IMG/VR virus record: IMGVR_UViG_3300031787_000001
Location: 62,001-126,000 of that record
Strand: one strand, 5' to 3'
DNA: 64,000 bases
Of the stretch, positions 12,632 through 29,733 are shown in pieces (position 1 is the first letter of the stretch; each line of letters opens with the position of its first letter). The notes beneath the pieces are model-generated. The model was not told the origin of the DNA, searched no databases, and worked only from the letters and a program-made list of their open reading frames with translations. A program made the translations under genes and the position numbers.

Positions 12632-14647
12632 ATGTCAGTAGATTTCATTGATGATGGGCAACCAACAAACCAAAATAAGAAAGGTAAGAGAAATTCTAAT
12701 ACACCTATATTAGATAATTTCTCAAGAGATTTGATAAAATTAGCACAAGAAGGTAAAATAGACCCTATTGTTGGTAGAGATAAAGAAGTAAAAAGAATTG
12801 CACAAATTCTTTCAAGAAAGAAGAAAAATAATGTTGTTATTGTGGGTGATGCCGGTGTGGGTAAATCGGCATTGGTTGAAAAATTGGCGCTATTGATTAA
12901 TAAAGGTAACTGTCCTTCAAATCTTTTAGATAAAAGAATAATGTCATTGGATTTGACATCTTTAGTTGCGGGTACCAAGTATAGGGGTCAATTTGAAGAA
13001 AGGATTAAAGCGATATTAAATGAATTACAAGAAGCACCGAATGTAATTGTTTTTATTGATGAATTACACACAATGGTCGGTGCAGGTAATGCCAGCGGAT
13101 CAATGGATGCAGCCAACATATTAAAACCCGCACTTGCTCGTGGTGAAATTCAATGTATTGGTGCAACAACTTTTGATGAATACAAAAAGAACATCGAAAA
13201 AGATTCTGCGTTAGTTAGAAGATTCCAAAAAATAATCTTACCGGAACCAACAGAAAAAGAAACTGTTGAAATTTTGGAAAATCTTAAAACATCATATGAG
13301 AATTTTCATAAAGTAAAATATGAAGATGGTGTTATTGATACTATTGTTAAAGTATCAAAAAGATTTATGACTGACAGACAATTTCCTGATAAGGCAATTG
13401 ATATTATGGATGAATTAGGTTCAGAAAAGAAAATATCTAATAAAATACCTGAAAGTGTTGAAAAATTAAAACAAGAAGTTGAGGAAATAAAACAAAAAAA
13501 ATTAGATGTCGTTAAAACACAGAATTATGAATTGGCAGCTAAATTAAGAGATACAGAAAAAACTGTTCTATCAAAATTAGAACAAGAAAAAGAAAAATGG
13601 TTGATAAACCAACAAAATAATAAAACACCAATTAGTATTGAAGATGTTTACCAGATAATTTCAAATATTACTGGTGTACCAATTACAAAATTGGATTCAA
13701 AAGAAACAGAAAAACTTTTGAATTTAGATAAAATTTTAACATCTAAGGTTATTGGACAGAATGAGGCGATATCAATCATATCTAAATGTATCAGAAGAAA
13801 TAGAGTTGGTATTAAAGATACAAATAAACCAATCGGATCATTTATATTCTTAGGATCAACTGGTGTCGGTAAAACATATCTTGCAAAATCATTGGCTGAA
13901 ATATTATTTGGTGATCCCGAAAAAATGATTCGTGTGGATATGAGTGAATTTATGGAGAAACACAATGTATCTAAATTAATTGGTTCACCTCCCGGTTACG
14001 TTGGATATGATGAAGGTGGTCAATTAACAGAAAAGGTAAAAAACAATCCATTTTCAGTTATATTGTTTGATGAAATTGAAAAGGCACATAAAGATGTTTT
14101 CAATTTGTTGTTACAAATTTTAGATGAAGGACACTTAACCGATTCTTTTGGTAGAAAAGTTAACTTCACCAATACTTTGATTATTATGACATCAAATGTT
14201 GGGGCTAAAAAAGTTTCTGAATTTGGTGGGGGAGTTGGTTTTGAAACATCTTCAACAAATAAACAAAAAGAAGAAGTTAAAAAAACAATGATACAAAAAT
14301 CATTGAAACAACAATTCAATCCTGAATTTTTAAATAGAATTGATGATGTAATCCTTTTCAATTCTTTAGACGAAAATGCACTAAAACAAATTATTGGTGT
14401 TGAATTAAATAAATTAAAAAATAGATTAACTGAAAAAGGATACAAAGTTAATTTTGACGAATCAGTATCACAAAAGATATATGAATTAAATCAACAAGAA
14501 GAATATGGAGCGAGACCCATAAAAAGAATAATACAAAATCTTTGTGAGGATTTCTTAAGTGAAGAAATTCTAAAAGGTACTATAAAAGAAAATGTTTTAG
14601 CAAATTTGAAAATTAAAGACGGAGAATTGGTAATTAGAAAAAAATAA
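12632..14647 (+). CDS. clpC: ClpC/ClpB-family AAA+ ATPase lacking the N-terminal Clp-repeat domain
   Basis: two Walker A motifs (GDAGVGKS, GSTGVGKT), FIDELH, PPGYVGYDEGG, UVR-like middle domain, C-terminal YGARP. Confidence 0.88.
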   Translation: MSVDFIDDGQPTNQNKKGKRNSNTPILDNFSRDLIKLAQEGKIDPIVGRDKEVKRIAQILSRKKKNNVVIVGDAGVGKSALVEKLALLINKGNCPSNLLDKRIMSLDLTSLVAGTKYRGQFEERIKAILNELQEAPNVIVFIDELHTMVGAGNASGSMDAANILKPALARGEIQCIGATTFDEYKKNIEKDSALVRRFQKIILPEPTEKETVEILENLKTSYENFHKVKYEDGVIDTIVKVSKRFMTDRQFPDKAIDIMDELGSEKKISNKIPESVEKLKQEVEEIKQKKLDVVKTQNYELAAKLRDTEKTVLSKLEQEKEKWLINQQNNKTPISIEDVYQIISNITGVPITKLDSKETEKLLNLDKILTSKVIGQNEAISIISKCIRRNRVGIKDTNKPIGSFIFLGSTGVGKTYLAKSLAEILFGDPEKMIRVDMSEFMEKHNVSKLIGSPPGYVGYDEGGQLTEKVKNNPFSVILFDEIEKAHKDVFNLLLQILDEGHLTDSFGRKVNFTNTLIIMTSNVGAKKVSEFGGGVGFETSSTNKQKEEVKKTMIQKSLKQQFNPEFLNRIDDVILFNSLDENALKQIIGVELNKLKNRLTEKGYKVNFDESVSQKIYELNQQEEYGARPIKRIIQNLCEDFLSEEILKGTIKENVLANLKIKDGELVIRKK

Positions 14648-19682: not shown

Positions 19683-19728
19683 TTTGTTTTAAGGAATATA
19701 TTGTTTATCTTTGTTTTGTTCTTTGACA
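19683..19728 (+). promoter_or_regulatory. Bacteroidota-type promoter followed by boxA-like element
   Basis: TTTG 19683-19686, 19 nt spacer, TATCTTTG 19706-19713, GTTCTTTGACA 19718-19728. Confidence 0.7.
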
Positions 19729-19743
19729 TTTTTGGAAATAGTT

Positions 19744-19832
19744 GCCCCGGTGGTGGAACAGGTAGACACGCAGGACTTAAAATCCTGTGGACCGAAACGT
19801 CCGTGCGGGTTCGATTCCCGCCTGGGGCACCA
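19744..19832 (+). tRNA. tRNA-Leu(UAA)
   Basis: cloverleaf, cagga-cttaaaa-tcctg, long variable arm, CCA encoded. Confidence 0.95.
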
Positions 19833-24252: not shown

Positions 24253-24301
24253 CAAACTTCAGGAGTAATTAACCTGAAGATGGAAGGTTCGAAACTTTCG
24301 A

Positions 24302-24403
24302 TTGGCTATGGTGTAATGGGCACACTGGTCCCGTGATTGGCTCGGTTATCGTCGAGTTTCAGTCGGGACCGGGGGATTCAGGTTCAATTCCTGATTGGTC
24401 AGC
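24302..24403 (+). ncRNA. tRNA-like RNA with anticodon arm extended into a long hairpin
   Basis: D arm gtgt/acac; stem ggtccc/gggacc enclosing ~32 nt hairpin; T arm tcagg-ttcaatt-cctga. Confidence 0.6.
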
Positions 24404-24408
24404 AAAAT

Positions 24409-24482
24409 GGACCCTTAGCTCAGTAGGTTAGAGCAAATGACTCATAATCATTAGGTGCACGGTTCGAGCCCGTGAGGGTCCA
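24409..24482 (+). tRNA. tRNA(CAU), most likely Ile2 (lysidine, reads AUA)
   Basis: aatga-ctcataa-tcatt; GGACCCU acceptor resembles Ile2; leader 1 uses ATA codons. Confidence 0.8.
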
Positions 24483-24559: not shown

Positions 24560-24667
24560 CCCCCGATATGTATGTGTAAGCAAGAAGCATATCATCAGTT
24601 GGGATCTTACAGTCCACGAACTGGGGTCCGGTGGGAACCGGGATGAGAGTACCCGAACCTCTCAAAC

Positions 24668-24739
24668 GCAGATATAGCACAATGGTTAGTGTTCGGCCTT
24701 GCCAAGGCTGAGATGCCAGTTCGAATCTGACTATCTGCT
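24668..24739 (+). tRNA. tRNA-Gly(GCC)
   Basis: cggcc-ttgccaa-ggctg. Confidence 0.9.
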
Positions 24740-24744
24740 CAAAT

Positions 24745-24894
24745 TGTACTGTGGTGAAATTGGCAGACACCCCCACTCGTCTCGTGGGCGTCGACAACGA
24801 AATAGGTAAATGGATAAGGGTTGACCACAAGCTAGCTAGCATATTTGTCCTTTACCGAATCGCGACATAGACGGTTCGAATCCTCTCGGTACAG
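24745..24894 (+). ncRNA. tRNA-like RNA with Leu-type D arm and ~80 nt variable-arm hairpin
   Basis: acceptor tgtactg/cggtaca; D arm ggtgaaattggcagacac; arm cccac-tcgtctc-gtggg lacking U33; T loop ttcgaat. Confidence 0.65.
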
Positions 24895-24923
24895 CATATA
24901 TTTTTGACAAATAAAAATAGTTT

Positions 24924-25163
24924 ATGACGATCTTAATCGGCATCAATGAATTAGAAGAAGAATTTCAAATACCGTGGAAGATGGGATTAGTTAATCATTT
25001 GGTCATTGATTACGCAGACAACGCAATCTATGGTACATTTGAGAAAAAAGAAGTAATTATTTTTAGGTTCAAAAAATATGGTTGGGTTTGTGATAATAGA
25101 TACAATTTATACACACTATCAAGTGGTGAGGCAGGTATCATGATTAACATGAATTCAACATAA
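24924..25163 (+). CDS. hypothetical protein
   Basis: 79 aa ORF between tRNA arrays. Confidence 0.5.
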   Translation: MTILIGINELEEEFQIPWKMGLVNHLVIDYADNAIYGTFEKKEVIIFRFKKYGWVCDNRYNLYTLSSGEAGIMINMNST

Positions 25164-25187
25164 AATATTTATTAATAACAACATGTT

Positions 25188-25649
25188 ATGAGAAAATTTA
25201 AAACATTATTCGGAATTGAGATTGATAATCTTGCTGAATATATTAAAGAATATATTTCAACAAGAGAAAATGTGGAGATATTAGTTGGCGCCGATTCTCA
25301 AAATTATAGTAATAGAAAAACTATATATGGAGTTGTTATTGCCTTATACACAAAAGGTAAAGGTGCACATGTTTTGTGTTCAAGAGATACTGTTCCAATT
25401 GAGAGAAACACATCAACCAGATTACTTACTGAAGTTTGGAAATCAATTGAGACCGCAGAATTTTTAAAAGAAAATGGTTTACCAAAACCATTATGGATTG
25501 ATATTGACTTAAATCCTGATCCGAAATTTAAATCAAATACCGTATTAAGACAAGCGGTTGGTCTTGTTGAAGGTATGGGTTATCAAGTTAGATATAAACA
25601 ATTAGGTGCTATGGTAACATACGCCGCAAATCACTTAGTTAGAAATTAA
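25188..25649 (+). CDS. RNase H-like YkuK (DUF458) family protein
   Basis: LVGADSQ, RLLTEVWKSIE, IDIDLN, YAANHL. Confidence 0.75.
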   Translation: MRKFKTLFGIEIDNLAEYIKEYISTRENVEILVGADSQNYSNRKTIYGVVIALYTKGKGAHVLCSRDTVPIERNTSTRLLTEVWKSIETAEFLKENGLPKPLWIDIDLNPDPKFKSNTVLRQAVGLVEGMGYQVRYKQLGAMVTYAANHLVRN

Positions 25650-26597: not shown

Positions 26598-26602
26598 CAT
26601 AT

Positions 26603-26680
26603 GGTGGCCTGAGATGGGTTGGTTACATCGTCAGATTGTGGCTCTGAAGAACACGGGTTCGACTCCCGTAGGTCACACCA
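26603..26680 (+). tRNA. tRNA-His(GUG)
   Basis: tcaga-ttgtggc-tctga, G-1, CCA encoded. Confidence 0.88.
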
Positions 26681-26683
26681 AAA

Positions 26684-26772
26684 GGAGAGTAAACTACGAC
26701 GGTGAGTAGACATGCCTGCTAAGCATTGTGTTCGTTAATTCGGATGAGGTTCGATCCCTCTACTCTCCGCCA
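26684..26772 (+). tRNA. tRNA-Ser(GCU)
   Basis: loop ctgctaa, variable arm, GCCA end. Confidence 0.85.
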
Positions 26773-26775
26773 AAT

Positions 26776-26848
26776 GCCGTGGGTTAGTGGAATACGACTA
26801 TCTCTCATAAGGATGGAGAACACAGTTCGAACCTGTGCTACGGTACCA
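26776..26848 (+). tRNA. tRNA-Met(CAU), elongator, atypical D arm
   Basis: tatct-ctcataa-ggatg, T arm cacag/ctgtg, CCA. Confidence 0.7.
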
Positions 26849-26868
26849 AAAAAAAGTTTTAAAAAGAT

Positions 26869-27162
26869 TTTGTATTTTAAAAAAGTATTTATATCTTTGT
26901 AAAAGTTCTTTAAACATCGTGGCGTGGAGAAGTGGTATCTCACTAGGCTCATAACCTAGGGACCGTTGGTTCGAATCCAACCGCCGCAACAAAAAAGTTT
27001 TAAAAAGATTTTGTTTTTTGAAAAACTCTTTTTATATTTGTAAAACAATTCGGTAATACACACCGAAAAAGTTCTTAAAAAAAAAGTTTGACAAAAATTT
27101 GGAAAGTTGAAAAACACTTCTTATCTTTGTAAAACAATCGGAAACGATAAAGTTCTTTGAAA
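26869..27162 (+). promoter_or_regulatory. three tandem, mutually similar Bacteroidota-type promoters with boxA-like elements
   Basis: TTTG/TAnnTTTG pairs at 26869/26892, 27010/27033, 27098/27122; GTTCTTTRAA at 26905 and 27152. Confidence 0.75.
26918..26989 (+). tRNA. initiator tRNA-fMet(CAU)
   Basis: C1:A72 mismatch, ctagg-ctcataa-cctag. Confidence 0.88.
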
Positions 27163-27164
27163 AT

Positions 27165-27965
27165 ATTGGGCGGTCTATAGTCCATAAAATAAACCATGAA
27201 AGTGGTATAAAGTGGAATACCTTGGTTTTGGTATTCTGCGGCTTGGGTAACCGAGCTCGAGTAGACAAACGAGATATCGTCTGACCTTTAGTACTGAGGG
27301 TAACACTGTAGGGAAAGTGGTTGGGCGATCAAGCGATGTGGGTCGTTTGGTTGAGGTGGGAACACCAATAAGAATAACTCGTAGAATTATTGCAAGAAAT
27401 GTTGTTATCCGACTTCATAATTGCGTTTTTCAATATTATGGTTGTCTTAAAACCGAAAGGTATGTTAGTGTACAGGTGGTGCTGTTATTAACCTTAACCT
27501 TAGCCTACCAAGGCATGAGTTATGAAGATGAGCAAAAATATGGAGGTGGGGACATCTCAGAGGGTAGTTTAGTATTTAGCCGTTCAAAAGATGGCTGAGC
27601 TGGTGACGAACCACTACCTTCACAATCCACAAACCAATAACTTGCATCCATTTAATTGCAAAATTAATAAATCAAGGAAAAGTGTTCGTCAGTTGTGGAT
27701 GACAGGTCACTACATAGTCATGAGTTGTTCATGGCCATGAAGGGTCCCAAGCCCAACATGATTTTCACCAAAGTTCTCTAATCTCGCAAGGATTAATTGG
27801 GGTGGCAACCTCGAAGAGTGATGAGTAATGAGAGAGTGATTCACAACTTAAGGATTGGTTAATCTAATTGACCGTGACTGATTATTACTACTCAAAAGGT
27901 AGTGGATAAGGGAAGAATCAATAATGTCCCAAAGATAATCACCCGAACGTGTAATCTCAGCGTTT
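27165..27965 (+). ncRNA. ~800 nt structured RNA, probably GOLLD
   Basis: ORF-poor, GC-elevated, many hairpins (e.g. gaatacc/ggtattc, gcttgg/ccgagc, ttagccgtt/gatggctga, ctact/agtag); size and tRNA-cluster/phage context fit GOLLD; family assignment not verified. Confidence 0.6.
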
Positions 27966-28031
27966 TATTTTCCTGATTTTTATAAAATCATGGTGGTGGA
28001 GTAATAAAAAGATTTCATGCCGCAAGGCCCC

Positions 28032-28059
28032 AAAGGTTAGATTTTTCTAACCTTTTTTT
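28032..28059 (+). terminator. intrinsic terminator after large RNA
   Basis: aaaggttaga-tttt-tctaaccttttttt. Confidence 0.75.
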
Positions 28060-28091
28060 GTTTTTATATTTTTTTTATTTATATTATACCT

Positions 28092-28844
28092 ATGAGATTA
28101 ATTTGTATATCAGACACACATTCTTTACATGAAAGAATGACACATAAAGTTGAAAAATATATCGATCCTGATCAAGACAATATACTCATCCATGCGGGGG
28201 ATTGTACTAATATGGGTAGAGAACCTGAAATTATTGAATTTGTTTATTGGTATCAAAATTTAAAAGGATTTGATACCAAGATCTTTATTGCGGGTAATCA
28301 TGATTTTGGTTTTGAACATTATAATGGTCTTCGTCATAGTAATGAGGCACCTTGGTTACATCATATAATAAATGAGGAGAATTTATCTCAATCAGATGTC
28401 GTTTATCTTCATGATTCTGAATTTGTAATTGAACATCCGAAATTTTCAAGACCAATTAAATTTTATGGAAGTCCTTGGCAACCTGAATTTTATAATTGGG
28501 CATTTAATCTTCCAAGAAATGGTTGGGAGTTAGAACTTAAATGGAAAGAAATACCAGATGATACTGATATATTGATCACACACGGACCTCCACATGGTTG
28601 TAGAGATTTTACACCACAAAATTTACAAGTTGGTTGTGAATTGTTGAGATATAGATTAGATACATTAAAACCACTTGTCCATGTGTTTGGACATATTCAT
28701 CATGCATATGGTGGTGCATATATTGATGATGTTTTATACATTAACGCATCAACATGTACAGAAAGATATGTCCCACGTAATAGACCTATTGTTGTTGATT
28801 TAAAAGAAGAAGATGGTAAAATAGTTACTACCTATATTGATTAA
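28092..28844 (+). CDS. calcineurin-like metallophosphoesterase
   Basis: DTH, HAGD, GNHD, THGPP, GHIH motifs. Confidence 0.9.
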   Translation: MRLICISDTHSLHERMTHKVEKYIDPDQDNILIHAGDCTNMGREPEIIEFVYWYQNLKGFDTKIFIAGNHDFGFEHYNGLRHSNEAPWLHHIINEENLSQSDVVYLHDSEFVIEHPKFSRPIKFYGSPWQPEFYNWAFNLPRNGWELELKWKEIPDDTDILITHGPPHGCRDFTPQNLQVGCELLRYRLDTLKPLVHVFGHIHHAYGGAYIDDVLYINASTCTERYVPRNRPIVVDLKEEDGKIVTTYID

Positions 28845-28885
28845 GTTTTTCATTTTTATATGATATTTATATATAAACAATATCT

Positions 28886-29086
28886 ATGAAAAATATAATT
28901 GATTTTTTAAAAAACCTATTAACAAAAAAATCTGAAGAAGTTATTTCAGAAATAAAACAAAAGGTTGTATCTGAAATAAAGGGTGAACCTGAGAAAGTAG
29001 AAGAACCTGTTAAGGTTGAGGAACCAAAAGAAGAAATCGTCGAAGAAAAACCCAAAAAAAGAGGTAGAAAGAAAAAGGTAGATTAA
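28886..29086 (+). CDS. small K/E-rich hypothetical protein
   Basis: 66 aa, ends KPKKRGRKKKVD. Confidence 0.55.
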   Translation: MKNIIDFLKNLLTKKSEEVISEIKQKVVSEIKGEPEKVEEPVKVEEPKEEIVEEKPKKRGRKKKVD

Positions 29087-29167
29087 TAAAAAAAATAAAA
29101 GATAAATTGGGTTAAATTTTTATTTAACCCTTTTTTTGTCTATATTTGTGAAAGTTCTTTAAAATAT

Positions 29168-29560
29168 GGGGGTGTCCAGGTATTGATTGGCGTTTATATG
29201 GTAAATGGGCACGTAGTCAGATGTCATCTATGACTTAAATCTACGGTGGTAAAAATCAAACGGCAACGTTTACAACAACATGGAAATTGCAGGTATCCTT
29301 GCAACTTCTAAAGTAGCTGCTTAATAAGTACCTACTGTCGGGTCGGTTAGGACATATAACCCAGGAACAGAAGTCCGTTATACGGGTCACAGGTCAGAGC
29401 TCGTTTAAAATAATTCTGAGACCAAGTTGTTTGTAGGTAGGTTTCTCACATATATCAAACCTAATATTTTGGAACATTGAGAACCAATGTTATACTAAAC
29501 GTGTAGTCCATCTATTGTATGGCGAACAAGACAAGGGTTCGATTCCCTTCACCTCCACCA
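29168..29560 (+). ncRNA. ssrA: tmRNA
   Basis: GGGGGUG/CACCUCC-ACCA acceptor with G3.U70, T arm aaggg-ttcgatt-ccctt; internal tag frame 29262-29324 GNVYNNMEIAGILATSKVAA*; promoter 29141, boxA 29154, terminator 29567-29593. Confidence 0.93.
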
Positions 29561-29733
29561 AAAATTAAACCCATCGAATTCGATGGGTTTTTTATTTATA
29601 ATAACTGAGGTTTATAAACGAACAAAGAGGTCTTTAGGACCCCTTTGTCGAGATTTGGAATACCCCCTTTCGTTTTTTTCGAGTTATCATCTAATGGCGA
29701 CCAAACCATTAAACTCTAATATAAATATCTAAT

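What the first reader, a model, noticed from the sequence alone, without database searches (positions are those of the whole stretch)
26991..28059. ~800-nt GOLLD-like giant RNA driven by tandem rRNA-style promoters
Seen: two tandem host-type promoters and boxA, a long multi-hairpin ORF-poor RNA, then a terminator. Established: GOLLD RNAs are ~800 nt, phage- and tRNA-associated, and of unknown function. Inference: a highly expressed RNA; its setting among translation-rescue genes hints at a related role. If it is not GOLLD, it is a new large ncRNA.
Basis: partly seen in the sequence, partly recalled or inferred. Interest (0 to 1): 0.6.

Follow-up and report, generated by a model that had tools for sequence, protein, structure and literature searches.

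The report
Jumbo-phage GOLLD RNA with boxA leader
This is a genuine, full-length, expressed GOLLD RNA (a known ~800-nt phage RNA that builds RNA-only cages) in a 287-kb freshwater phage; what is new is that it is transcribed like a ribosomal RNA, from host-type promoters followed by a boxA antitermination word.

Summary
Window 27560-27963 (+) matches Rfam GOLLD (RF02032) end to end at 338.5 bits (cut-off 150). Rfam models only the 3' half. The 5' half (27166-27559) is conserved end to end in 43 viral contigs and has strong covariation (74 of 106 pairs compensatory), so the RNA is 800 nt (27166-27965). It lies in a 286,785-bp phage record, after a 21-tRNA array and 1.2 kb before a tmRNA.

The upstream promoters are real but of Bacteroidota type (TTTG-N19/20-TAnnTTTG), so a sigma-70 scan misses them. 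The "boxA" (AAGTTCTTTGAAAA, 27150-27163) is the word found in the 16S leaders, and mostly the spacers, of five Bacteroidota genomes. It precedes 30 of 30 homologues (0.024 expected).

RNA-library contigs from four independent lake metatranscriptome studies cover only about 27185-27950 and the tmRNA, not the flanks.

A loop that forms a symmetric cage contact in the published cryo-EM structure keeps only self-complementary dinucleotides (GC, CG, AU).

Verdict: a new member of a known family. The rrn-style leader, and a recurrent neighbouring initiator-like tRNA(CAT), were not found described in the papers searched. The RNA's function remains unknown.

The parts
26869..26899 (+). Promoter P1 (Bacteroidota type: TTTG, 19 nt, TATCTTTG) in front of the initiator-like tRNA
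   Evidence: Pattern match. The same architecture precedes 16S genes of Bacteroidota.
26903..26914 (+). boxA-like word AAGTTCTTTAAA directly before the tRNA(CAT)
26918..26990 (+). tRNA(CAT), initiator-like: C1xA72 mismatch, A73, A11:T24, 2 of 3 G:C pairs at the base of the anticodon stem
   Evidence: ARAGORN and Rfam; features scored. Present in RNA contigs of two runs.
27010..27040 (+). Promoter P2 (TTTG, 19 nt, TATATTTG); predicted start near 27046
   Evidence: The start position is inferred from the known -7 spacing.
27049..27080 (+). P2 leader: a 7-bp hairpin (27049-27067) then an imperfect boxA-like word AAGTTCTTAAAA (27069-27080)
   Evidence: Hairpin reported; word.
27098..27129 (+). Promoter P3 (TTTG, 20 nt, TATCTTTG), the promoter conserved in relatives; predicted start near 27135
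   Evidence: A TAnnTTTG box precedes the boxA in 28 of 30 relatives, with TAACTTTA in one more.
27137..27148 (+). Leader hairpin ATCG-GAAA-CGAT (boxB-like position)
   Evidence: Read from the sequence. An equivalent hairpin lies between the -7 box and boxA in most relatives.
27150..27163 (+). boxA: AAGTTCTTTGAAAA
   Evidence: Same word as in Bacteroidota rrn leaders and spacers. Upstream of 30 of 30 homologues against 0.024 expected per 260 nt.
27166..27559 (+). GOLLD 5' domain (not in the Rfam model)
   Evidence: End-to-end nhmmer matches in 43 viral loci. 106 pairs, 74 compensatory, 97% of cells paired against 34-41% in slid controls.
27560..27963 (+). GOLLD 3' domain (Rfam RF02032), including the variable A-rich linker at about 27623-27690
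   Evidence: 338.5 bits, model 1-416 of 416. 87 pairs, 47 compensatory.
27781..27793 (+). Hairpin with loop CGCAA, the probable equivalent of L21a (symmetric kissing loop, bridge B8 of the cage)
   Evidence: Across 29 homologues the internal dinucleotide is GC (23), CG (4) or AT (2), all self-complementary. This matches the signature described in PMC12286853.
27966..28031 (+). 3' tail between the RNA body and the terminator; not conserved and absent from RNA contigs
28032..28065 (+). Intrinsic terminator (10-bp stem, 4-nt loop, T run)
29142..29560 (+). Context: -7 box TATATTTG (29142-29149), boxA-like word (29152-29164) and tmRNA (29168-29560)
   Evidence: Rfam 86.8 bits; words; RNA contigs at 29177-29559.

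Best explanation
Window 27166-27965 (+) is a GOLLD RNA gene of a freshwater jumbo phage whose host is probably a member of Bacteroidota.

Shown: it is a full-length member of the family, with a clade-specific, covariation-supported 5' domain. It is present in RNA libraries as a discrete body without its flanks.

Inferred, step 1: host RNA polymerase starts at two tandem Bacteroidota-type promoters (P2, P3).

Inferred, step 2: the nascent leader (small hairpin plus boxA at 27150-27163) recruits NusB/S10 and the other rrn antitermination factors, as on rRNA operons. The 800-nt untranslated, highly structured RNA is then made quickly and without Rho termination, and perhaps with folding help. Transcription stops at the terminator at 28032-28065.

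Inferred, step 3: leader and tail are trimmed, because RNA contigs cover only the body.

Inferred by homology, step 4: like the env-38 GOLLD solved by cryo-EM, the RNA assembles into a 14-mer RNA-only cage. The loop that makes a symmetric cage contact keeps a self-complementary dinucleotide here.

What the cage does is not known. The neighbouring initiator-like tRNA, tRNA array and tmRNA make a role in translation during infection the most likely area.
For: Identity: Rfam GOLLD 338.5 bits, full model. The 5' domain is conserved end to end in 43 loci. 121 of 195 pairs are compensatory, with slid controls far lower.

Phage context: virus record of 286,785 bp; portal, large terminase and tail proteins; 23 tRNAs and a tmRNA.

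Promoters: 12 sites against 4.4 expected. The same architecture is seen on 12 Bacteroidota rrn leaders.

boxA: 5 against 0.54 expected in the window. The same word is in rrn leaders and spacers, in 30 of 30 homologues, and in the 634-kb megaphage locus L121.

Expression: exact-match contigs from four metatranscriptome studies lie at 27185-27894. There are none in 26600-26911, 27016-27119 or 27952-28159, and only sparse low-depth contigs on the next ORF.

Cage contact: the loop dinucleotide is only GC, CG or AU, as described for bridge B8.
Against: No experiment here shows Nus-factor binding, antitermination, transcript ends or strand. Logan contigs cannot give ends or strand, and their depth is a poor measure of level.

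The boxA words before the tRNA and the tmRNA lie so close to the -7 box that they would sit at the very 5' end of those transcripts. That is unusual for a boxA.

boxA is not universal among GOLLD loci: it is absent in megaphage L120 and in Acinetobacter phage AM24, where GOLLD sits bare inside a tRNA array.

The host phylum is inferred from promoter and boxA type only; no prophage or named host was found.

Mapping hairpin 27781-27793 to L21a rests on position in the model, not on a structure alignment.
Confidence: 0.85

Rival explanations
1. The RNA is GOLLD, but the GTTCTTTGAAA word is not a Nus-factor boxA. It is instead a promoter-proximal or initial-transcribed element of a stable-RNA promoter class, or a processing signal, shared by host rRNA and phage stable-RNA genes.
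For: Before the tRNA (26903) and the tmRNA (29152) the word begins only 3-4 nt after the -7 box, so it would be at or near +1. RNA contigs do not include the leader, which is compatible with a cleavage site near 27166.
Against: In relatives the distance from the -7 box to the word varies from 22 to 145 nt, usually with a hairpin in between, so it is not a fixed promoter part. In host-phylum operons it recurs in the 16S-23S spacer far from any promoter, the classical boxA arrangement. A leader/tail processing stem is not supported (mean z -0.09).
Confidence: 0.2
2. The stretch is a new large non-coding RNA that merely resembles GOLLD, or another ornate RNA such as ROOL.
For: The 5' half has no Rfam model, so half the molecule is unmatched in the library.
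Against: The whole 416-position GOLLD model is matched at more than twice the gathering score, and no other family scores, even at E 0.1. A variable 5' region is itself a described GOLLD property.
Confidence: 0.01
3. The region is protein-coding (for example the 93-codon frame at 27317-27598), or the RNA-library signal is carried-over phage DNA.
For: An open frame of 93 codons exists. RNA libraries can contain DNA (warning).
Against: Substitutions follow base-pair covariation, not codon structure. The same RNA libraries lack the immediately flanking DNA (0 in 27016-27119 and 27952-28159) and barely touch the neighbouring 250-codon gene, which DNA carry-over would cover evenly.
Confidence: 0.01

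Closest known systems
GOLLD RNA env-38 (marine metagenome; cryo-EM 14-mer cage, Kretsch et al., Nature 2025, PMC12286853)
   Same: About 800 nt. Two domains, a variable 5' and a conserved 3', joined by a variable linker. Phage-associated. Next to a Met-tRNA gene. The self-complementary loop dinucleotide of the symmetric kissing contact is kept.
   Different: The papers searched and read here do not mention promoters or a boxA leader for GOLLD.
GOLLD of Lactobacillus brevis prophage and of Mycobacterium tRNA arrays (Weinberg et al. 2009; Morgado et al. 2020, as cited in PMC12286853)
   Same: Same Rfam family; location beside tRNA islands; expressed RNA.
   Different: Different host phyla. The window's copy is in a 287-kb lytic-type phage record from fresh water, with Bacteroidota-type promoters. 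Induction at lysis was shown for the L. brevis copy only (from the paper, not tested here).
GOLLD copies in the 634-kb and 642-kb uncultured megaphages LR745206 and LR756502
   Same: Closest deposited relatives (67-72% identity). Rfam 287 and 275 bits. LR745206 has the same order: tRNA(CAT), hairpin, boxA, GOLLD.
   Different: Those records are unannotated. LR756502 lacks the boxA word and is flanked by unusual tRNA-like genes.
rRNA operon leader (tandem promoters, boxB-boxA, Nus-factor antitermination complex)
   Same: Tandem promoters, a hairpin followed by boxA, then a long structured untranslated RNA. The word is identical or nearly so to that of Bacteroidota rrn leaders and spacers.
   Different: The product is not rRNA. 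No flanking processing stem was detected. Factor binding is untested.
ROOL RNA (the other phage-encoded cage-forming ornate RNA)
   Same: Phage- and tRNA-associated large RNA that forms an RNA-only cage.
   Different: Unrelated sequence and fold. No Rfam match other than GOLLD covers the stretch.

Membership tests
GOLLD RNA (Rfam RF02032) | Covariance-model match to the conserved 3' region at or above the gathering score | tested here: met
   338.5 bits against 150, E 2e-96, model positions 1-416 of 416, not truncated.
GOLLD RNA (Rfam RF02032) | About 800 nt in total, with a less conserved but structured 5' region joined by a variable linker | tested here: met
   5' domain 27166-27559 conserved end to end in 43 loci. 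106 pairs, 74 compensatory. Homologues are 784-815 nt. The linker columns are the least conserved.
GOLLD RNA (Rfam RF02032) | Encoded by phages or prophages, next to tRNA genes | tested here: met
   Virus record with portal, terminase and tail genes. 21 tRNAs lie within 3.5 kb upstream, the nearest 175 nt away.
GOLLD RNA (Rfam RF02032) | Symmetric kissing loop (L21a, bridge B8) whose internal dinucleotide stays self-complementary | tested here: met
   Hairpin 27781-27793: GC in 23, CG in 4 and AT in 2 of 29 homologues, with no non-palindromic dinucleotide. The assignment to L21a is by model position.
GOLLD RNA (Rfam RF02032) | L20 to J13/15 kissing interaction (bridge B7) supported by covariation | tested here: inconclusive
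   A column scan for partners of the variable loop positions 27725-27726 gave no unique partner.
GOLLD RNA (Rfam RF02032) | Self-assembly into a D7 14-mer cage | not testable with these tools
   Needs in-vitro transcription with mass photometry or cryo-EM.
GOLLD RNA (Rfam RF02032) | Made as RNA (for the L. brevis copy: rising at lysis) | tested here: met
   Exact contigs from four metatranscriptome studies are confined to the body. Timing in infection is not testable here.
rrn-type boxA antitermination leader | A boxA word matching that of the host group's rRNA leaders and 16S-23S spacers | tested here: met
   Prevotella AGTTCTTTGAAAA, Draconibacterium AAGTTCTTTAAAA, Perlabentimonas GGTTCTTTGACA, Prolixibacteraceae and Flavobacteriaceae GTTC(T/A)TTGA. 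Clear spacer copies in three of five genomes, a weak variant in a fourth. The host group itself is inferred.
rrn-type boxA antitermination leader | Placed between the promoter and a long untranslated structured RNA, and conserved in homologues | tested here: met
   30 of 30 homologues against 0.024 expected per 260 nt. Chance-hit viral loci show it in 0-1 of 53 comparable windows.
rrn-type boxA antitermination leader | Binds NusB-S10 and confers read-through of Rho-dependent terminators | not testable with these tools
   Biochemical and genetic test required.
rrn-type boxA antitermination leader | Leader and trailer form a processing stem around the mature RNA | tested here: not met
   Duplex energies of leader against tail are no better than shuffles in 31 loci (mean z -0.09). 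This is typical of rRNA operons but not required for boxA function.
Bacteroidota sigma-A promoter | -33 TTTG and -7 TAnnTTTG about 19-21 nt apart (established knowledge: Bayley et al. 2000, from memory) | tested here: met
   Three full matches in 26869-27129. Window total 12 against 4.4 expected. The same boxes lie before the boxA in 12 Bacteroidota rrn leaders.
ROOL and other large ornate RNAs | Covariance-model match | tested here: not met
   No family other than GOLLD matches 27166-27965, even at E 0.1.

The most novel reading that the evidence does not exclude
In phages of Bacteroidota, GOLLD is produced as a pseudo-ribosomal RNA. The phage copies the host's rrn promoter and boxA leader to load the Nus antitermination and folding machinery onto an 800-nt cage-forming RNA. 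The gene is also genetically coupled to an initiator tRNA: same strand, either just upstream or 9-16 nt downstream, where RNase P cleavage would cut the GOLLD 3' end. This would tie the cage's unknown function to translation initiation during infection.
Probability: 0.3. Interest if true: 0.65.

Novelty: new member of a known kind. Interest (0 to 1): 0.4.

Why it matters
GOLLD is among the largest bacterial or phage non-coding RNAs. It forms a 14-mer RNA-only cage, yet its function is unknown. This copy does not change that. It does add three handles that can be tested.

1. In one large clade the RNA carries an rRNA-type boxA leader. This suggests how a phage gets an 800-nt untranslated RNA made in quantity, and it gives a simple genetic switch (mutating the boxA) to lower GOLLD output.

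2. Its recurrent neighbour is an initiator-like tRNA, which narrows the hypotheses about what the cage deals with.

3. The RNA is easily seen in lake metatranscriptomes, so natural expression data exist.

It also adds Bacteroidota-type jumbo phages and megaphages to the known GOLLD carriers.

Tried and rejected
- Sigma-70 promoter scan: nothing upstream of the RNA. The promoters are of Bacteroidota type, so this scan was the wrong model, not evidence of absence.

- rRNA-like processing stem between leader and 3' tail: duplex energies are no better than shuffles in 31 loci (mean z -0.09). Rejected.

- Host identification through prophage copies: the genome-contig scan with a 17-nt 5'-domain word gave 37 loci, of which 36 are chance hits (about 70 expected by chance). 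The one real copy (L142) is on an 11.9-kb contig binned into a 'Woesearchaeota' MAG, probably a mis-binned phage contig. No host name was obtained.

- 'Other GOLLD clades' as a contrast for boxA: 70 of the 118 viral loci fetched with the 16-nt core word have no GOLLD 3' domain. The 0-1 of 53 figure is therefore only a background rate, not a clade contrast. True out-group copies are few: AM24 and L120 lack boxA, L121 has it.

- Covariation partner for the L20-like loop (bridge B7): no unique partner.

- SmpB in the phage record: none found.

- My first parse of the ARAGORN sequence output was cut at 50 nt, which gave wrong 3'-end features. It was redone from coordinates.

- Read laying was given 3,101 letters. 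No alternative genetic code was used.

Full report
WHAT IS THERE

A gathering-threshold Rfam scan of the whole window gives one outstanding match: GOLLD (RF02032) at 27560-27963 on the + strand. It scores 338.5 bits against a cut-off of 150, E 2.3e-96, covers model positions 1-416 of 416 and is not truncated. The match repeats on the whole genome and at a permissive threshold, where no other family covers the stretch.

The window is bases 62001-126000 of a 286,785-bp IMG/VR virus record that CheckV rates 86% complete. The window encodes a portal protein, a large terminase and tail proteins. It has about 30% G+C. It carries 23 tRNA genes, all on the + strand, and a tmRNA at 29168-29560. The setting is therefore a jumbo phage with a large tRNA island.

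THE WHOLE RNA

Rfam models only the conserved 3' half of GOLLD. To find the rest, I fetched viral contigs carrying a 16-nt word of the 3' core and searched them with the window's upstream 394 nt.

- 43 loci match 27166-27559 from the first to the last few bases, at 187-394 bits.
- The full RNA is 784-815 nt in 32 distinct homologues and 800 nt here, at 27166-27965.
- An alignment of 29 non-redundant copies, 67-83% identical to the window, gives a consensus fold of 195 pairs. Of these, 121 keep pairing through changes on both sides.
- In the 5' domain alone there are 106 pairs, 74 with compensatory changes, and 97.1% of cells are paired. When the 3' partners are slid by 1-3 columns the figures are 14-25 pairs and 34-41%.

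PROMOTERS

A sigma-70 scan finds nothing upstream. The sequence instead carries the Bacteroidota promoter consensus: -33 TTTG, then -7 TAnnTTTG about 19-21 nt later. This consensus is established knowledge from Bayley et al. 2000, cited from memory.

Full matches lie at 26869-26899 (before the tRNA), at 27010-27040 and at 27098-27129. The window has 12 such sites against 4.4 +/- 2.0 in shuffles, and none of 100 shuffles reaches 12.

The predicted starts, near 27046 and 27135, are inferences from the usual spacing.

boxA

After each -7 box comes a word of the form AAGTTCTT(T)(A/G)AA. It starts at 26903 (before the tRNA), 27069 (after a 7-bp hairpin), 27150 (after the hairpin ATCG-GAAA-CGAT) and 29152 (just before the tmRNA). 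The pattern AGTTCTTWRAA occurs 5 times in the window against 0.54 expected, and no shuffle reaches 5.

Is this the boxA of the presumed host group? I took five Bacteroidota genomes reached through unrelated loci: Perlabentimonas, Prevotella, Draconibacterium, a Prolixibacteraceae and a Flavobacteriaceae. I fetched their 16S genes with flanks.

- All 12 leaders show TTTG/TAnnTTTG promoters followed, 117-330 nt before the 16S start, by AGTTCTTTGAAAA, AAGTTCTTTAAAA, GGTTCTTTGACA or GTTCATTGA. In two genomes the promoters are tandem, and in one of these (Prolixibacteraceae) each is followed by the word.
- The same word recurs in the 16S-23S spacer in three genomes, as a weaker variant in a fourth, and never inside the 16S.

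Leader plus spacer is the classical boxA arrangement (Berg, Squires and Squires 1989, from memory).

Among the GOLLD homologues, 30 of 30 with enough upstream sequence have GTTCTT(T/A)(G/A)A within 260 nt on the sense strand, against 0.024 expected. It usually lies 26-28 nt after a TAnnTTTG box, with a small GNRA-type hairpin in between. The 634-kb megaphage LR745206 has the same order.

No paper in the searched library links GOLLD with boxA or antitermination.

The word is not universal. Megaphage LR756502 lacks it. So does Acinetobacter phage AM24, where an unannotated GOLLD sits between tRNA-Asn and tRNA-Asp, 2 nt before the latter.

TERMINATOR

A 10-bp stem with a 4-nt loop at 28032-28055 is followed by a T run. 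The 66 nt between the RNA body and this terminator are not conserved.

EXPRESSION

The 3.1-kb stretch 26600-29700 is held by DNA-type runs of at least ten freshwater or lake studies. About 25-29% of its words are held by six metatranscriptome runs from four studies.

I laid one run from each study.

- RNA-library contigs with no differences lie at 27185-27322, 27357-27495, 27466-27799, 27499-27724, 27695-27822, 27722-27872 and 27785-27871. One further contig, with 4 differences, spans 27468-27894.
- Nothing lies on 26600-26911, 27016-27119 or 27952-28159.
- The next gene (28092-28844) has only a few contigs of word depth 2-3.
- The tmRNA is covered at 29177-29559.

The tool warns that contig depth is a poor measure and that contigs show neither ends nor strand. 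I use the result for one point only. The same libraries lack the DNA immediately flanking the body, so the signal is RNA, and it is a discrete body without its leader and tail. Adapter letters at loose ends before 27185 and after 27935 are compatible with ends near the body's limits. Many 90-95% contigs show that related GOLLD variants coexist in these lakes.

CAGE CONTACTS

The cryo-EM paper reports that GOLLD env-38 forms a D7 14-mer cage. One inter-half-shell bridge (B8) is a symmetric kissing loop, L21a at about nt 656-657 of 833. Its internal dinucleotide switches between the palindromes GC and CG.

The hairpin at the corresponding model position (window 27781-27793, loop CGCAA) shows GC in 23 of my 29 homologues, CG in 4 and AT in 2. 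All three are self-complementary, and no other dinucleotide occurs. The window has GC. This independent set therefore reproduces the published signature, which supports cage formation by this clade. The mapping to L21a is by position only.

A search for the covarying partner of the L20-like loop (bridge B7) was inconclusive.

NEIGHBOURS

In 14 of 29 non-redundant homologues, counting the window, the nearest tRNA within 1.5 kb is a tRNA(CAT) on the GOLLD strand. No other anticodon ever takes that place. It is upstream at 175-416 nt (the window and four others) or downstream at only 9-16 nt (nine loci).

The window's copy (26918-26990) has a C1xA72 mismatch, A73, A11:T24 and two of the three G:C pairs at the foot of the anticodon stem. 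These are the marks of a bacterial initiator tRNA. Four relatives share C1xA72 with A73, and three more relatives plus megaphage L121 have U1xU72 with A73. Five relatives are ambiguous. The window's other tRNA(CAT), at 24409, has a paired G1:C72.

The published env-38 copy also lies beside a Met-tRNA. A tRNA placed 9-16 nt after GOLLD implies that RNase P could form the GOLLD 3' end in those phages; this is an inference.

A leader/tail processing stem as in rRNA operons is not supported. No SmpB gene is found in the record, so 'translation-rescue genes' amounts to the tmRNA alone. The adjacent proteins are a metallophosphoesterase (28092-28844) and an RNase H-like protein (25188-25649).

HOW IT MOST LIKELY WORKS

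Shown: the identity as GOLLD, the two-domain fold, the promoter and boxA words with their conservation, the terminator, and presence as RNA.

Inferred:
- Host RNA polymerase starts at P2 and P3.
- The leader boxA loads NusB/S10 and the rrn antitermination complex. The long untranslated RNA thereby escapes Rho, is elongated quickly and may be helped to fold.
- The ends are trimmed.
- The RNA assembles into the 14-mer cage.

The cage's task is unknown. Its genetic company (initiator-like tRNA, tRNA island, tmRNA) and the published ribosome pull-down point to translation.

VERDICT

It is a new member of a known family, so the overall interest is moderate.

Two features look new: the rrn-style leader shared by a whole clade, and the initiator-tRNA linkage. 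The first was not found described in the papers searched; the second was not searched beyond the env-38 Met-tRNA note. Both are worth a short follow-up.

Noticed in passing
window 26918-26990; loci L110, L106, L055, L003, L041, L047, L038, L121: The tRNA(CAT) gene that recurrently flanks GOLLD in this clade is initiator-like (unpaired 1:72, A73, G:C-rich foot of the anticodon stem). In nine relatives a tRNA(CAT) begins only 9-16 nt after the GOLLD 3' end.
   Followed up: partly
window 24253-24409, 24562-24668, 24740-24900, 26680-26850: Gaps in the tRNA arrays hold tRNA-like pieces (T-arm and acceptor-like ends) that neither ARAGORN nor Rfam calls. 26683-26769 gives a sub-threshold tRNA-Sec match (38.1 bits, cut-off 47). 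24740-24900 looks like a tRNA with an insertion of about 80-90 nt.
   Followed up: partly
window 29142-29560: The phage tmRNA (Rfam 86.8 bits; not called by ARAGORN) has its own -7 box and a boxA-like word 4 nt before the mature 5' end. It is present in RNA contigs. No SmpB gene is found in the 287-kb record.
   Followed up: partly
L120 3107-3225 and 4169-4242 (LR756502, 642-kb megaphage): Two related tRNA-like genes flank the GOLLD. One carries an insertion; the other has an odd anticodon loop that ARAGORN cannot assign.
   Followed up: no
L171 about 1900-2682 (Acinetobacter phage AM24, KY000079.2, record 24800-25590): A GOLLD lies unannotated between tRNA-Asn and tRNA-Asp in this cultured phage, and by BLAST also in phages Ab15 and Herod. 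In Ab15 the stretch is annotated as a hypothetical protein.
   Followed up: partly
L142 (contig of 11,904 bp in a 'Candidatus Woesearchaeota' MAG): This contig carries a bacterial-phage-type GOLLD with a Bacteroidota promoter and boxA. It is probably a phage contig mis-binned into an archaeal MAG.
   Followed up: no
window 19683-19745: Another full Bacteroidota promoter, followed by TGTTCTTTGACA (a boxA variant, as in Perlabentimonas rrn), lies just before tRNA-Leu(TAA) at 19744.
   Followed up: no
window 25188-25649 and 12632-14647: An RNase H-like ORF (PF04308) sits inside the tRNA island. A Lon-like ATP-dependent protease (phrog_4871, 804 bits) is encoded 13 kb upstream.
   Followed up: no
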